From the NCBI RefSeq assembly GCF_036588685.1, contig NC_086373.1:90706001-90770000 (forward strand): a stretch of DNA of 64,000 nucleotides, written 5' to 3'. A model generated the notes under the pieces. That model was given only the letters and a program-made list of their open reading frames with translations. It made no database searches and was not told where the DNA came from. This stretch comes from Mytilus trossulus. Taxonomy: Eukaryota. Below are positions 56,084 through 61,671 of this stretch, piece after piece (position 1 is the first letter of the stretch; every line of letters begins with the position of its first letter). The position numbers and the translations under genes are program-made.

Positions 56084-57055
56084 TATGGTGTAATTACACT
56101 GACAAAACTTGTATATCGTTAAATAAAGTTTGACTGTATTTTTATAATAAAAGTAAAATATGATAAGTTGCTCTTTTTGTACAGCTGATGACACAGTGTC
56201 AGTCTTTCATATTACCAGTCACCAAGTAGCAAGTAAATTTTAGGAGTAGTTTATAGTCTCTTTTCGTGTGTTTCGACTCTATTTTATCAGTCTCTCTCCC
56301 ACTCATATGCATTGATACTCTTTTGGTATCCCGCCTCTTTTTTAGCAGTGGCAGTGGTACTTTCAAATCCTGATTACCGCAGGTATACATGTGTAACACT
56401 GAAGTAGAGTCTACACTTGCCTAGTCTCATGGCCGTTCCATGTTCTTCTTAGTTTGATGATTTCAAATGTGTATAATACTTGGCTTGTTTTAAACATACA
56501 TGATGTATGCACAAACATATATATTTTATTCTGTAACCCCCCCCCCCCATACACCTCTTTCTTTTGGCTAAGAAAAATTCCTTTGAGATCTGCGCTAACA
56601 GACTATCATAATTTTCCATAATAAAGCAGCTAGTATATAATAAGTAAATGCCAATAATTTAAGGAAAAAAGTAAACCGTAATAAAATGAAGACTCGTGTG
56701 ACTCGGGAATATATCAGTTAACGAATATATAGTTATAGATGAATACTTAATAGTAACCTCAATGGTTGACTCGGCAATAGAAATATGGTCACTCATATTC
56801 TCCTTCTGTCCGGCAGCAAAACTCTTACTAAAAAGGGGTGTCCTATGAATGTGCAGGATGTATAAAAACACATCCAGCTCTGGTCGAACTGTGGACGTTG
56901 AATAGGCTATAGTTGTCACGCTCTCTTCACGTTAAAGAAGATTCAAAGAACTCTTGCATACGATATTATTTTTGAACTTTTACGTCATTTAATGAACCTA
57001 GTATATATCTTTAATCTTATCAGTAAACTGGTACTAGTTCTACGATAGCCATGAA

Positions 57056-60000
57056 CACCCTGTATAACCCCGATACAAATAAAACCGGACGTTGACGCGT
57101 TCGAGTCGAGCACACCGTTTAGCACTGAGTTCAGACAGTAAGGAATTCATACTTTTAAAGGCAATCCAATGTCTATTCTTCGTATATTTTGCGCCAATAT
57201 ATTCTTTGCCATAATACTCATGAGTTACTAAAAGGTTTTTAAAAAATGTGACATTTTTTTATACAAACATCAAAAAACGCACGACGATATTAATGATAAA
57301 ACGTGCTTGGTATTTTTAAACATTCAAAACTTAATGTTTCTCGTACCTCATAGTTTTTAAAACATACATTTTTGAAAACTTCATAGTATAAATTAACAAA
57401 CTTATAAAGATCGTTTGTTTATGTTGTATCTAGAAACAAAAAAATACACCTTTTAAAATGTCTCTTTTTTCATGTTGTGTACGCTTCGTTGTCATTACAC
57501 CTTTTTATACTGTACGCTTCGTTGACAAAATATTGCGTTTGTGAATGAATTTTGCATGTATTAGATTATGCTTTGATATGATTATAACCAATATGCATGT
57601 TTGAAAATAATAATTTACCATCATAACATGCAGACAGCAACCCATAATGTCAGTTGTATTGTCGAAAAACAGGAAATTTCTACATTTAAAAAAATCCTCA
57701 TGTATACAAAAGTGTGAATTGGTAGGAAAATACAATAACTCAATAGATGCAACTATGACAAAGCATACAGATACACAAGTCCGATTTCTAATTTCATAGC
57801 ATATTTGAAAGTGTTTACCATACAACAGTCAACGTACGGTTAGGTGGTGGGTTGGGTGCCCGCTAACATGTTTAATCCCGCCATATTCTGTATGTGCCTG
57901 TTCAAAGCCAGGAGTCTGTAATTCAGTGGTTGTATATATTTTTTTGTTCACACTTTTGTGCAAAAATTGAGCCGTTAGTTTTCTCGTATGCACTGACTAC
58001 ATTTGTTATTTCGGTGTGCTTAATAGCGGTGTGGGCTTTTTCATTGTTAAAGGCCGTACGGTGACATATAGTTGTTCATTTTTGTTTCGTTTGGTCTCTT
58101 GCGAAGAGCTGTTTCAATACCGCATCTTCTATTTGATATAGAAAGTAATCAAATATAATCAATGGATTATAGGTTAAGCCTTTTGGCCTGAATCTCAGAG
58201 GCGGGTCCAAAGGGGTCATAGCTTACCATAGAGTTACATTAAGGCTCAAGAATAGGTCTATGCAAGGAACATGTAACTGATAGCCATCAATAGTAACACA
58301 GTTACTTTAATGTGAAGATATAAAGATGAAGAGAAAACACTCAATATTAACTGGTTTGCTTTCTTTAATTATGTTTTTGTGTTTGTTTAATTTTTATGGT
58401 ATAAAGATTATGCTTAAATTCCTCGAACATTACAGTCTTTCTACTGTGGTGCAAAAATCTAAATGATTGGTCAGATCATTCTGGTTATTATAAACACCTT
58501 TAAAGTCTATACTCACCCATATGCATTTCATTCAAATTTTGATTTATTTCACTGAAGACCACAGGGACCATATTTATATTCCCCAGTTACCCTTGGCGTC
58601 ATTGGTAAATTATGGGTTAGCAAAGCATCAATCACCAACCTAACCTTAGACATTTGCTGTGTTTCTTCTTTACTGTTTGTACTTAACAATATATGGACCC
58701 TTTTATTTGTTTATGACACGCATACGTAATGGCTGATTGTTGGTTGCTTAACGATCACTTGCAAATATGCCATGCATGTTCAGGATAAGCACAAAGTAGC
58801 AACACATACATGTAAGTCCTGTGAGGAGACCCTCCGGAATTACGTCAGGGACGTTTGGATTGCCACTGGATAAAATGATGTATATGTTAGAAGGACACAA
58901 ATGGTGCCTTTCAACAGGCTATTTATAGACATCTCTTGAAGTTTTTGCAGGGGTTCGTACTATGTAGTTAGCGTGGTACTCTCTTTACACGAGACATTGG
59001 ATTTTATATTCCCATTCGGACAGGACGTGACTGTGTACTGTTACATCCCACACAATTAAATGGGTGGCCAACTTCAGTCAGTTTTTACTGCCGATCGGAA
59101 AAAGACCAAAGTGATCATAACTTATAGTATATCTCCGAGTCACCCTTCACCAAATTCTTTCATAAATAAAAAAAAATCAATTGGCCACACTATAGAAAGT
59201 TTTGCTCTACCTGTTAAATCAAAACATCACTTAACATTATTACAATTTATGCACACTTATGAGAACTCATAATACCGTACATCTTCTCGATACTGTTCAT
59301 ATTTGGCATTGCACAAGTTCGTGCGTTTTATTACGTCTTTACCTAAAAGCGTAGGATATACTGATTAAAACACTTTGGATACACGATTTACTTCTTAGTT
59401 GTAATTCGCTTTGAAATAACTATCAGTTACTACAACTACTCCTTTGTCGATATTCTATGTATATGGTTTTTGTGCCTTGTACCGACATTTTGAGTTTAGC
59501 CAATTGCAACAGAACTTTTTTATCATGTTGTGCTGTTACACCAGTGTTCTATGTTAAGGAGAGGGTTTGGGGGCTCACATGTTTAAACCTGCCGCACTTT
59601 GTTTTGTCGGTCCAACGTCAGAATCCTGCAGTACATTGATTATATAGATCTGTCATTTCATAAGTTATAAACTATTAACCGTAAGTGTAATCGTTTTTTT
59701 CATATTTTTTTTTTTCATATCGGGGCCTTTTTTAGGCGACTGTATGGTATAGGTTTTCCTCATTGTTAAATGTTGTACATTGGGCTATAATAGTTTATAC
59801 GCCAACTTCATTTAAACTTTGATGGACAGTTGTCTCACTGGCCATCACACCACATCTACAAAGCTCCGCATGTAAAAAAAAAAATAATTAAAAAATTAAA
59901 GCAGTTGGAATGCCATCTATGGCATTCGGCAAATTAAGTTCAACGAGCTCCTTCATGTATGTCTGCTTTCGTCTAGGCGGATTTGGACCAACATCGGCAT

Positions 60001-60803
60001 TTGGAAGAGTCAAATTGTGAAAAAGAAGTCATTAAAGTTTTAATGACTGTACTATACTTTTTGAAACTTTCTTTCCTCTGGAATATATTTATTAACTGTT
60101 CATTTCATCTGGAAAAACATTGAAAGTCTCAATTTTCAATAGAAACATTCCAAGCAGATGTACTCGAGTTACATATTTCAATTTTGGCTTTGTATGACAG
60201 ATATTTTAGGTTCAACTAGTTTGACTAAGTTAACAGATAAACATTTGCAATAAAATACAGAACAAGGGTCGCCGAAACCATCTCGAAAACCTTGACAAGA
60301 AAGTGTTTGTCACGGTTTTTGTCAACGAACTGTACAGTGATTATTTCAAAACGCACAACGAACGCGACACATTTGGTGAAACGAACAATACAGTCAGAGA
60401 AAATTTATTTTTTATGATATTGCGTTTATTCTAAGTTCTAGGGCACATTTGACGGCACGTAGTAATTCAATGTATAGTTATTTAGTATTGCTTAAGGTAT
60501 TAATACTCAAAGGTGTATGCACGAAAAGATATTCAGCATTGTTTACATCGTAAACCGTATGAAATTGCACCATGTCTGTGCGTTTTGCATCTAGCAGTTT
60601 AGTCAAACGTTTTATACAATATCTAAAACTTACAACAACTGTATAATTGAATAAAGATACTAACATGCTCATTGACATATTCATATATACTCAAATAAGT
60701 TCTAGAGAGGCATTCAAAGTTATTGTCATCCCAAATGTTGTCCTGATTATCGCTTCGAACGCGTCAACGTCCGGATTCATTTTTATCGGGGTTATACGGG
60801 GTG
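57056..60803. mobile_element. 3.75-kb non-autonomous Transib/RAG-like DNA transposon
   Basis: 49-bp TIRs (57056-57104 and 60755-60803, 4 mismatches) beginning CAC and ending GTG. Exact 5-bp TSD ATGAA (57051-57055, 60804-60808). No intact transposase; nested dispersed repeats inside. Confidence 0.78.
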
Positions 60804-61671
60804 ATGAAAGCTTCTCTCGTATTTTTAATTACGATTACTACGGTAAGTTAGTACTATTATAACAGCATTTCATAACTTAATTTGGCGTAAATGTTCTTTC
60901 ATGCTTTAAAGCCGTTATAACTTGTGTCAAATGCCTTTTTGTTACTTTGAGAATTAAGGTTTAGAGCACTTATACTCCTAAAGCACGTTCTTAAAGAAAA
61001 GAAATAGGACAGTGAACACATGTTAATAGGTAAAATTTTATGAAGTCGAGCATGGATAAAAGTATATAAAGGGTGTAAATAAAAAACCAAGGACAACTGT
61101 TATTGTCATAAAGCTTTATTTGTGTTAGAAGAATCTTTGTCTTGATGATAATACATAACTCATGTAGTAGCTACGACATCAATTATTTGCTGCATGGAAT
61201 ATTTTTTTTTCTTCAAAAGAAAAAAAAAAGGAATATATTTTTTTTTTAGATTTAAACCAATATGTTGTACAAATAAGATAACAAACACATAAATGGTATG
61301 CAATATTTTATTTTTTCTAATGTTTAATTGTTAAAACGTCATCCATATAGTATTTGTGAATGAATGTTTTTAATTTTGGCATTCAGGTTGCAGTGGGCCA
61401 GGCAACAGTATGCAGAAAAGCTTCAGATTGTAATCCAACTGAATGTTGTAAGGAAGGATTCCAAAGAAAGCGGTTTTTGTTTGACGCTCCTGGGACATGT
61501 CAACCCTTGCGAAAACAACAAGAATCATGTGACCCGTTTAATGCCACCTCCAGAAGTAATCCCAACCTGCGTTCAATAGAGTGTCCCTGTGAAACTGGAT
61601 ATGTCTGTCACAGTACAGAAGCCAAAGTCACTGCACACAACTCATTCTGTGTTTATGGCCCTGCACCATGA
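60804..61671 (+). CDS. Secreted 10-Cys prokineticin/astakine (colipase-fold)-like peptide, 107 aa; exons 60804-60842, 61387-61671
   Basis: Exon 1 MKASLVFLITITT ends at a gtaagt donor (phase 0) and joins after attcag to VAVGQA-TVC, giving a signal peptide. Cys spacing is C-x5-C-x4-CC-x16-C-x9-C-x17-CPC-x5-C-x13-C. Confidence 0.85.

What the first reader, a model, noticed from the sequence alone, without database searches (positions are those of the whole stretch)
57051..60808. Transib/RAG-like transposon inserted exactly at the start codon of the prokineticin-like gene, duplicating the ATG
Seen: gatagcc-ATGAA|CACCC...3748 bp...GGGTG|ATGAA-agcttct. The TSD is the first five bases of the CDS. 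The native Kozak context (gccATG) and presumed promoter (tatatat at 57002, tcagt at 57020) are stranded 3.75 kb upstream. There the left ATG now opens only a 14-codon ORF, while the complete CDS begins at the base after the right TIR. Inference: the gene is silenced, or driven from a promoter inside the element, or restorable by excision. This would be a transposon switch on a putative haematopoietic/neuro-immune cytokine. The CDS and splice sites are intact despite nested insertions in the element, which hints at continued expression.
Basis: partly seen in the sequence, partly recalled or inferred. Interest (0 to 1): 0.8.

Follow-up and report, generated by a model that had tools for sequence, protein, structure and literature searches.

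The report
Transposon inserted at gene's start codon
A young 3.7-kb cut-and-paste transposon sits exactly in the start codon of one of two copies of a mussel prokineticin-like gene and most likely switches that copy off, which is a neat but ordinary kind of mutation.

Summary
Window 57056-60803 is a 3748-bp non-coding DNA transposon. It has 49-bp terminal inverted repeats (45 of 49 matching, CAC...GTG ends) and the 5-bp duplication ATGAA on both sides.

- **Family:** the genome holds 350 matching ends, and 35 of 36 copies checked have exact 5-bp duplications.
- **Empty site:** a paralogue 9.7 Mb away reads ...cagccATGAAcgcttctc... uninterrupted, so the element landed in codons 1-2.
- **Gene:** it has two exons, and exon 2 encodes a 10-cysteine prokineticin/astakine-type domain. 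Support comes from a profile match to Bv8 (E 4e-7) and a matching predicted fold.

- **"Transib/RAG-like" is unproven.** No transposase partner was found, and the genome has no RAG1-Pfam match. Targets are AT-rich (15% GC), whereas Transib targets are reported GC-rich. hAT5 elements also make 5-bp duplications.
- **The "nested insertions" are in every full-length copy**, so they predate the family's spread.
- **An intact coding sequence tells us nothing.** The copy is young (0.9% private divergence), and a neutral coding sequence would stay intact with probability about 0.79.

The likeliest outcome is a null or weak allele backed up by the 96%-identical paralogue. No read evidence could be obtained. 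The scan has noted similar CAC-ended, 5-bp-duplication elements elsewhere in this genome.

The parts
55521..57050 (+). Native upstream region (presumed promoter and short 5' UTR) of the gene, now separated from the coding sequence
   Evidence: 86% identical to the region upstream of the paralogue over 1535 bp, up to the limit of locus L050. The TATA-like tatatat at 57002 is conserved in the paralogue. Promoter function is inferred, not tested.
57051..57055 (+). Left copy of the 5-bp target-site duplication ATGAA. It holds the original ATG in its gcc context.
   Evidence: The paralogue has ATGAA once at this point.
57051..57095 (+). Stranded short reading frame: 14 codons plus stop, running from the original ATG into the left TIR
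   Evidence: Translation MNTLYNPDTNKTGR*
57056..60803 (.). Non-autonomous DNA transposon, 3748 bp, with CAC...GTG termini
   Evidence: 24 full-length copies at 94-100% identity, out of 40 candidates scored. Longest ORF is 106 aa. 0 of 9 of the longest ORFs of the family have a Pfam match at E <= 0.1.
57056..57104 (+). Left terminal inverted repeat (49 bp, starts CACCCTG)
   Evidence: 45 of 49 positions match the right TIR. The 20-mer has 350 genome hits against 0 for the control.
57862..58139 (.).
   Evidence: Direct repeats D1/D2. 70-75% similar to repeats in L051. Present in all full-length copies.
59573..59857 (.). Internal copy 2 of the same short repeat
60755..60803 (-). Right terminal inverted repeat (49 bp; its reverse complement starts CACCCCG)
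60804..60808 (+). Right copy of the duplication ATGAA, which is the start codon plus two bases of the intact coding sequence
60804..60842 (+). Exon 1: 13 codons (MKASLVFLITITT, the start of a signal peptide), followed by a GT donor
   Evidence: 38 of 39 bases are identical to the paralogue. GT/AG sites checked.
60843..61386 (+). Intron (phase 0)
   Evidence: GT...AG. Alignable to the paralogue's intron: 401 matches, 47 mismatches, 124 gap columns.
61387..61671 (+). Exon 2: 94 codons plus stop, encoding a 10-cysteine prokineticin/colipase-fold domain
   Evidence: Pfam Prokineticin E 0.018, below the cut-off. Profile of relatives against PDB Bv8 2kra gives E 4.2e-7. The ten best matches of the predicted fold are prokineticin/MIT1/Dickkopf/colipase-type chains.

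Best explanation
**Shown**
- A non-autonomous cut-and-paste DNA transposon inserted by a 5-bp staggered cut into the sequence ATGAA, which forms codons 1-2 of a two-exon, secreted, prokineticin/astakine-like gene. The element is 3748 bp, has 49-bp TIRs and CAC...GTG ends, and belongs to a family with about 175 element-equivalents in this genome.
- The insertion duplicated the ATG. It moved the native upstream region, with its ATG context, 3.75 kb away from the intact coding sequence.
- The gene arose by a duplication older than the insertion (Ks 0.13 between the copies, against 0.9% private divergence of the element). Its 96%-identical sister copy, 9.7 Mb away, keeps the uninterrupted site.

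**Inferred**
- A transcript from the native promoter would run into the element. It would meet a 14-codon frame, 71 further ATGs and 9 poly(A) hexamers before the real start.
- So this copy is most likely a null or strong hypomorph, while the paralogue supplies the function.
- The coding sequence is intact simply because the insertion is recent.
- The target (W-W-N-W-W, AT-rich) fits the family's own sequence preference. No targeting of start codons needs to be invoked.

**Superfamily**
The element is Transib-like in its ends and duplication length, but the transposase is unknown and membership is unproven.
For: - **Boundaries, TIRs and duplication:**
- **Family size:** 350 TIR hits against 0 for the control; 24 full-length copies at 94-100% identity.
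- **Duplication length:** exact 5-bp duplication in 35 of 36 copies with both ends.
- **Empty site in the paralogue:** the upstream match ends at C1:81095634 and the downstream match starts at C1:81095638, so the two overlap by exactly the 5 bp. The sequence is shown.
- **Gene copies:** only two copies exist in the genome, and only one in the window.
- **Selection and age:** Ks 0.134, Ka 0.020, Ka/Ks 0.15. The terminal branch of the window copy is 0.0092, and its closest relatives are 98.6% identical.
- **Obstacles to a read-through transcript:** 71 ATGs and 9 AATAAA/ATTAAA hexamers on the + strand of the element, and no TATAWAW in its last 400 bp.
- **Target preference:** duplications are 14.9% GC against 31.8% in the flanks.
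- **Non-coding element:**
- **Prokineticin fold:**
Against: - None of the six RNA runs listed belongs to the window's organism label.
- **A promoter inside the right end of the element cannot be excluded.** The second ATG keeps a purine at -3. Only one 3-codon upstream frame lies within the last 70 bp.
- **The element's status in the population is unknown.** Whether it is fixed, polymorphic or hemizygous was not determined.
- **The combined Ka/Ks of 0.15** covers both lineages since the duplication. It cannot show relaxed constraint after a recent insertion.
- **The 'paralogue' could in principle be a very divergent misplaced haplotype.** This is unlikely, given Ks 0.13 and a placement 9.7 Mb away.
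Confidence: 0.6

Rival explanations
1. The element carries an outward-reading promoter in its right end. The coding sequence is still expressed, but under new regulation (gene 'rewired', not silenced).
For: - The complete coding sequence starts at the first base after the right TIR, with G at -3.
- Between 60736 and the ATG only one 3-codon upstream frame exists.
- An AT-rich stretch (catatatact, about 105 bp upstream of the ATG) could serve as a weak TATA-like site.
Against: - There is no TATAWAW in the last 400 bp.
- TATA-like strings are common by chance in a genome with 32.6% GC.
- No transcript evidence could be obtained.
- The element is a non-coding derivative with no known gene of its own.
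Confidence: 0.15
2. Transcription still starts at the native promoter and the element is removed as an intron of the 5' leader. This would leave an mRNA with a short upstream frame ahead of the true ATG.
For: A GTAAG-type donor-like site lies at about 57139, downstream of the stop of the 14-codon frame. Spliced-out transposons in leaders are known in other organisms (recalled).
Against: No convincing acceptor (pyrimidine tract followed by AG) is seen just upstream of 60804. This was judged by eye only. There are 9 poly(A) hexamers inside the element. No read data could be obtained.
Confidence: 0.07
3. The insertion acts as a reversible switch: excision, somatic or germline, restores the gene.
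For: The family was active recently, with copies 98.6% identical. The ends and duplication of this copy are intact.
Against: - No transposase source was found.
If both ATGAA copies remained, the first ATG would open a two-codon frame whose stop overlaps the true ATG. This is read from the sequence and is an inference.
- An intact paralogue exists, so there is no evident need for a switch.
Confidence: 0.03
4. On the element's kind: it is a bona fide member of the Transib superfamily, moved by a RAG1-core-like transposase.
For: - 5-bp duplications in 35 of 36 copies, and CAC...GTG ends in all copies seen.
- Kapitonov & Jurka 2005 give 5-bp duplications and CAC-starting heptamers as Transib hallmarks (PMC1131882; passages and section 8 read).
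- An A-rich 9-mer follows a 12-bp spacer in both TIRs.
Against: - Pfam RAG1 finds nothing in the genome. The best match is 13.5 bits at E 7.3. The model's reach to Transib enzymes is unknown, and the control genomes did not ring.
- Targets are AT-rich, whereas that paper reports a strong GC-rich preference.
- The heptamers CACCCTG and CACCCCG match CACAATG at only 4 and 3 of 7 positions.
- A survey of bivalve genomes found one Transib ORF among 14,275 DDE elements (PMC10294476, passage).
- hAT5 elements also make 5-bp duplications (PMC9004415 and PMC12730594, passages).
- An unchecked note of this scan (s1-823590) assigns a P-like enzyme to another CAC-ended, 5-bp-duplication family of this genome.
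Confidence: 0.4

Closest known systems
Transib superfamily non-autonomous elements (Transib-N families; Kapitonov & Jurka 2005, PMC1131882)
   Same: 5-bp target-site duplication, termini starting CAC, TIRs of a few dozen bp, length 3-4 kb, cut-and-paste family with many non-coding copies (paper passages).
   Different: - The heptamer is CACCCTG/CACCCCG rather than CACAATG.
- Targets are AT-rich (15% GC) rather than GC-rich.
- No RAG1-core-like gene is detectable in the genome with Pfam RAG1.
- No autonomous partner was found.
Protostome RAG-like (RAGL) transposons of oysters and a nemertean (Martin et al. 2020, PMC7204232)
   Same: CAC start of the TIR and 5-bp duplications; occurrence in bivalves (passages).
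   Different: - The published TIR consensus CACTWMCAAACKTYKBB is matched only at CAC (the AAA at positions 8-10 is TAT here).
- The genome gives no RAG1 Pfam match, which a RAG1L gene should give.
- That paper's TIR lists are in supplements that I could not open.
hAT5 group of hAT transposons (5-bp duplications; cited in PMC9004415 and PMC12730594)
   Same: 5-bp target-site duplication; hAT enzymes are abundant in this genome (150 Dimer_Tnp_hAT matches scored).
   Different: - Classical hAT ends have G as the third base (PMC1131882, legend of Figure S7). Here it is C.
- TIRs here are 49 bp long.
- 0 of 54 hAT matches in the covered part of the genome lie within 256 kb of a listed TIR site.
Transposon insertions in the 5' end or start codon of genes that give null or unstable alleles (for example P-element and Ac/Ds alleles; recalled)
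   Same: A cut-and-paste element in the first bases of a gene separates promoter and coding sequence. Only exact removal would restore the original sequence.
   Different: Here the duplication itself is the start codon, so both an orphan ATG and an intact coding sequence remain. The hit gene has an intact recent duplicate.
Astakines / prokineticin-domain proteins of invertebrates (review PMC9756803, passages)
   Same: Secreted protein of about 107 aa with the 10-cysteine prokineticin pattern and no AVITGA N-terminus. Oyster and unionid relatives are named 'Prokineticin domain-containing protein' by their sources.
   Different: The protein itself scores below Pfam's Prokineticin cut-off (15.8 against 21.6 bits). 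No functional data exist for it. A role in haematopoiesis is only by analogy.

Membership tests
Transib superfamily | 5-bp target-site duplications | tested here: met
   35 of 36 copies with both ends have an exact 5-bp duplication. The exception, L023, has 4 bp. For L008 the right boundary was shifted by one base.
Transib superfamily | TIRs begin with CAC (RSS-heptamer positions 1-3) | tested here: met
   Left ends: 35 of 36 copies begin CAC (L009 reads CAT). Right ends: 35 of 36 end ...GTG (L008 lacks the last G; its right boundary was shifted by one base).
Transib superfamily | Heptamer close to CACAATG, plus an A-rich nonamer after a 12- or 23-bp spacer | tested here: inconclusive
   The heptamers CACCCTG and CACCCCG match at 4 and 3 of 7 positions. 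The A-rich 9-mers ACAAATAAA and AAAAATGAA follow a 12-bp spacer at both ends. In a 33% GC genome an A-rich block is weak evidence.
Transib superfamily | Autonomous partner encoding a RAG1-core-like DDE transposase | tested here: inconclusive
   - 18 further copies with these TIRs are all non-coding.
- Pfam RAG1 has no match at E <= 0.01; the best is E 7.3.
- Only the first 100 of the 350 TIR sites were listed.
- The sensitivity of the RAG1 model for Transib enzymes is unknown.
Transib superfamily | Preference for GC-rich targets (reported for Transib and RAG in PMC1131882, section 8) | tested here: not met
   The 35 duplications are 14.9% GC, against 31.8% in the adjoining 30 bp and 32.6% in the 1.4-kb flanks.
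Protostome RAGL transposons | TIR consensus CACTWMCAAACKTYKBB, and RAG1L/RAG2L genes in the genome | tested here: not met
   Only CAC is shared. No RAG1 Pfam match in the genome.
hAT5 group | 5-bp duplications made by a hAT transposase; hAT-type ends | tested here: inconclusive
   - The duplication length fits.
- The third base is C, whereas classical hAT ends have G.
- No hAT match lies near a listed TIR site: 0 of 54 within 256 kb.
- The ends of hAT5 elements themselves were not available to me.
P-element-like transposons | P-type (THAP9-like) transposase linked to these TIRs | tested here: inconclusive
   - There are 41 TNP-like_RNaseH_N matches in the genome. 0 of the 13 in the covered part lie within 95 kb of a listed TIR site.
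- One five-copy P-like family (L051) has a left boundary that does not start with CAC.
- The 8-bp duplication of classical P elements is recalled, not tested.
Prokineticin / astakine (AVIT, colipase-fold) proteins | Ten-cysteine prokineticin domain behind a signal peptide | tested here: met
   - Ten cysteines in the pattern C-x5-C-x4-CC...C-x-C.
- Pfam Prokineticin is listed for 7 of 10 relatives and is over the cut-off in 3 of 10.
- Profile A1 against Bv8 gives E 4.2e-7, and against MIT1 2e-4.
- The model has mean pLDDT 79.8. Its ten best Foldseek matches are all of this fold, although every E-value is above 0.001.
Prokineticin / astakine (AVIT, colipase-fold) proteins | AVITGA N-terminus of vertebrate prokineticins | tested here: not met
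   The residues before the first cysteine read VAVGQATV. Absence of AVITGA is the stated mark of astakines (PMC9756803, passage).

The most novel reading that the evidence does not exclude
This mussel genome holds many young families with CAC ends and 5-bp duplications. The family described here alone has about 175 element-equivalents. Yet the genome shows no RAG1/Transib-type gene and an AT-rich, not GC-rich, target choice. These families may therefore be moved by a transposase lineage not yet linked to RSS-like ends: a very divergent Transib clade or an unrelated enzyme. The insertion described here would then be a segregating on/off allele of an astakine-like cytokine gene, created by that active system.
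Probability: 0.15. Interest if true: 0.6.

Novelty: new member of a known kind. Interest (0 to 1): 0.3.

Why it matters
- **As a mutation it is ordinary.** A mobile element knocked the promoter off one of two recent gene copies. It is an unusually clean example, because the duplicated target is the start codon itself and a paralogue preserves the empty site.
- **It could serve as a natural knock-out or marker allele** of a prokineticin/astakine-like gene in a mussel, if it segregates in populations.
- **The wider point concerns classification.** CAC ends plus 5-bp duplications are routinely read as 'Transib/RAG-like'. In this genome that reading cannot be backed by a transposase, and the target preference contradicts it. 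Claims about RAG ancestry from such ends alone need caution.

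Tried and rejected
**Searches that led nowhere**
1. **Autonomous partner.** I fetched 18 further TIR-bounded elements of 1.2-7.9 kb. All are the same non-coding family with deletions or nested insertions. Their seemingly unique parts are only diverged versions of the same sequence.
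2. **Pfam scan of the family's ORFs.** 9 of the longest ORFs were scanned. None matched at E <= 0.1; the single hit at E <= 1 was Cas_GSU0053 at E 0.17, taken as chance.
3. **Pfam RAG1 in the genome.** Nothing was found. The control genomes did not ring either, so this is weak evidence.
4. **Coordinate cross-check.** I compared P-like and hAT matches with the TIR sites. That list covers only the first 100 of 350 sites, on C1 to the first 42 Mb of C5. There was no co-location.
5. **P-like family L051.** Its left boundary is not CAC, and its right boundary lies outside the fetched DNA. This says nothing either way for my family.
6. **Expression and polymorphism.** Neither could be tested.
   - The RNA runs hold 0.07-0.10 of the gene region's words. 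A paralogue-like transcript would give about 0.11, and the window copy about 0.49.
   - No RNA run carries the window's organism label, so I draw no conclusion.
7. **The search for homologous proteins with the exon-2 peptide:** blank.
8. **Exact look-up of the genomic exon-2 ORF:** not in the collection.
9. **PMC6004678.** It was listed for 'hAT5', but the term is not in its main text.
10. **Assembly artefact.** Rejected as unlikely, given the perfect duplication and unique flanks that match the paralogue on both sides. It is not excluded by reads.

**Supplements I could not open**
- PMC1131882: Figure S4 and Table 2, on targets.
- PMC7204232: the TIR lists.
- PMC10294476: which species holds the single Transib ORF.

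**Rows dropped before counts**
- L021, L024 and L027-L030 are truncated copies lacking an end. They were left out of the duplication count.
- The duplications of L031-L036 were not scored.
- L030 was skipped.

Full report
**1. The observation**

- The left flank reads ...ctacgatagcc ATGAA (57051-57055).
- The element runs from 57056 (CACCCTGTATAACC...) to 60803 (...GGTTATACGGGGTG), which is 3748 bp.
- It is followed by ATGAA (60804-60808) and then agcttctctcg...

The repeat finder reports the terminal inverted arms. A base-by-base comparison gives 45 of 49 matching positions, after which similarity is lost. In the window the terminal 20-mer occurs only at these two ends, even with three mismatches allowed; none is expected from 100 shuffles.

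The stranded upstream ATG opens MNTLYNPDTNKTGR and then a stop, that is 14 codons. The ATG after the right end opens MKASLVFLITITT, followed by gtaagt.

**2. It is a mobile family**

Searching the window's own genome with the element gave 24 full-length matches at 94-100% identity, plus many partial ones. That genome has 1.30 Gb in 541 contigs, and only 40 of 8610 first-look candidates were scored. The TIR 20-mer, with one mismatch allowed, has 174 forward and 176 reverse hits. The reversed control has 0 and 0. That is about 175 element-equivalents.

I scored target-site duplications in the 24 full-length copies and in 12 further TIR-bounded copies. 35 of 36 have an exact 5-bp duplication.
- L023 has only 4 bp.
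- For L008 I shifted the right boundary by one base.
- Truncated copies (L021, L024, L027-L030) were left out, and L031-L036 were not scored.

The duplications are AT-rich, at 14.9% GC against 31.8% in the adjoining flanks. Positions 1, 2, 4 and 5 are mostly A or T. ATGAA fits that preference.

**3. The element is non-coding**
- The longest ORF in the window copy is 106 aa.
- Eighteen additional elements of 1.2-7.9 kb are the same sequence with deletions or nested insertions.
- Their apparently unique parts are diverged versions of the same sequence.
- Nine of the longest ORFs of the family have no Pfam match at E <= 0.1.

They are copies of a widespread short repeat. Because all 24 full-length copies carry them, they were part of the element before it spread. 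They say nothing about the time since this insertion.

**4. The empty site**

The 800 bp upstream of the element and the 947 bp downstream each have one other match in the genome.
- Both lie on the same strand of the same contig, 9.7 Mb away.
- The upstream match is 84% identical and the downstream match 78%.
- The upstream match ends at C1:81095634 and the downstream match begins at C1:81095638. The two therefore overlap by exactly five bases.

Read out, the paralogue is ...ctacgacagccATGAAcgcttctctcgtatttttaattacgattactacg|gtaagt.

Similarity to the paralogue extends at least 1535 bp upstream, to the limit of the locus, and downstream to about 62032. The genome holds only these two copies of the gene, and the window holds one.

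**5. The gene**
- Exon 1 (60804-60842, 13 codons) and exon 2 (61387-61671, 94 codons plus stop) are joined by a GT...AG intron in phase 0.
- Exon 2 carries ten cysteines in the prokineticin pattern.
- On its own it scores below Pfam's Prokineticin cut-off (E 0.018, 15.8 against 21.6 bits).
- A full HMMER scan found 18 relatives. Pfam Prokineticin is listed for 7 of the 10 that I scanned, and is over the cut-off in 3.
- A profile of 12 sequences matches the solved structures of Bv8 (E 4.2e-7), MIT1 (2e-4), Dickkopf C-terminal domains and colipase.
- The predicted structure has mean pLDDT 79.8. Its ten best Foldseek matches are all in this fold class, though none reaches E 0.001.
- The sources name the oyster and unionid relatives 'Prokineticin domain-containing protein'.
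- The AVITGA N-terminus is absent. A review gives that absence as the mark of invertebrate astakines (PMC9756803, passages).
- A haematopoietic or immune role is by analogy only.
- The spliced protein was never sent to any tool. Searches used exon 2 alone.

**6. Age and constraint**
- The two gene copies differ by 9 synonymous and 5 non-synonymous changes, giving Ks 0.134, Ka 0.020 and Ka/Ks 0.15. Both were therefore under purifying selection for most of their history.
- The window's element sits in a young sub-clade (L001-L006) with about 98.6% pairwise identity. Its terminal branch is 0.0092 substitutions per site.
- The insertion is thus much younger than the gene duplication.
- At that divergence about 3 substitutions are expected in the 328 coding and splice positions, and 7.9% of possible substitutions would be disabling. 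A neutrally drifting copy would still look intact with probability about 0.79, not counting indels.
- The intact coding sequence therefore does not argue for continued expression.

**7. Likely effect (inferred)**

A transcript from the native upstream region would enter the element after about 20-30 bases of leader. On the + strand it would meet the 14-codon frame, 71 further ATGs and 9 AATAAA/ATTAAA hexamers before reaching the true start. I therefore take this copy to be a null or strong hypomorph, buffered by the 96%-identical paralogue.

An element-borne promoter remains possible. The true ATG keeps G at -3, and only one 3-codon upstream frame lies in the last 70 bp. There is, however, no TATAWAW in the last 400 bp.

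Restoration by excision would need exact removal. If both ATGAA copies stayed, the first ATG would open a two-codon frame whose stop overlaps the true ATG (read from the sequence).

**8. No read evidence**
- The look-up of sequencing runs listed one strong DNA holder (0.81, organism A), four of organism B (0.30-0.39), and RNA runs holding only 0.07-0.10 of the words.
- A transcript of the window copy would hold about 0.49 of the words, and one of the paralogue about 0.11.
- The RNA shares are thus in the range expected from a paralogue-like or orthologous message. None of those runs bears the window's organism label, so nothing follows for this animal.

**9. What kind of transposon**

In favour of Transib:
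- Kapitonov & Jurka (PMC1131882; passages and section 8 read) describe 5-bp duplications and CAC-starting heptamers as Transib hallmarks.
- In 2005 they called Transib the only superfamily with 5-bp duplications. The element has both features.

Against, or weakening:
- hAT5 elements were later described with 5-bp duplications (PMC9004415 and PMC12730594, passages).
- The same 2005 paper reports a strong GC-rich target preference for Transib and RAG. This family's targets are 15% GC.
- The heptamers match CACAATG at only 4 and 3 of 7 positions.
- The published protostome RAGL TIR consensus is matched only at CAC (PMC7204232, passages).
- Pfam RAG1 finds nothing in the genome; the best match is 13.5 bits at E 7.3. 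That excludes RAG1-like genes better than it excludes distant Transib enzymes.
- A bivalve survey found a single Transib ORF among 14,275 DDE elements (PMC10294476, passage).

Earlier notes of this scan:
- They report several other families in this genome with CAC ends and 5-bp duplications.
- One follow-up note assigns a P-like enzyme to one such family. These notes are unchecked.

My own partial tests gave no link for this family.
- 0 of 13 P-like matches and 0 of 54 hAT matches in the covered third of the genome lie near a listed TIR site.
- One P-like family has a non-CAC left end.

I therefore call the element Transib-like in its ends and duplication, with the superfamily unproven (about 0.4 for true Transib).

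**10. Verdict**
- The structural observation is fully confirmed and strengthened by a paralogous empty site.
- The functional reading (a switch, with continued expression) is unsupported.
- The family label is unproven.
- As biology it is a clean example of a common event: a young non-autonomous DNA transposon disrupting the 5' end of a recently duplicated gene.
- The more interesting open point is which enzyme moves the many CAC-ended, 5-bp-duplication families of this genome.

Noticed in passing
L050 (G000:C1:81093214-81097138, minus strand); aligned to window 61649-61671: The paralogue carries a tandem duplication of about 46 bp that starts right after its stop codon. As a result the last coding bases appear twice, the second time in the 3' UTR.
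   Followed up: no
window 57862-58139 and 59573-59857: Two diverged copies (72-77% identical) of a widespread short repeat lie inside the element. The same repeat occurs in L051:219-361 and 534-685, and in dozens of genome places.
   Followed up: partly
window ~62032: Similarity between the window and the paralogue ends here, about 120 bp before the retrozyme-like array that another reader noted at 62153-63170. The array may mark the edge of the duplicated segment, or be a later insertion.
   Followed up: no
L051 (G000:C1:17434300-17439900): A P-element-like (TNP-like RNaseH) transposase gene with introns, present in five copies at 97-99% identity. The shared sequence starts at L051:~106-111 with a T/A-rich end, not CAC. 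The right boundary lies beyond the fetched DNA.
   Followed up: partly
window 57056-57104 and 60755-60803: Both TIRs show a heptamer, a 12-bp spacer and an A-rich 9-mer (ACAAATAAA / AAAAATGAA). This gives two '12-type' ends rather than a 12/23 pair. The same reader noted this separately (s1-827387).
   Followed up: partly
window 61387-61410: The residues just before the first cysteine read (V)AVGQATV-C. This begins with AV, like the AVITGA-C of vertebrate prokineticins, but is one residue longer. It is not conserved in the relatives of alignment A1.
   Followed up: no
G000:C4:62369907-62369955: Two left-type TIR 20-mers lie on the same strand only 29 bp apart. This is an odd arrangement and I did not look at it.
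   Followed up: no
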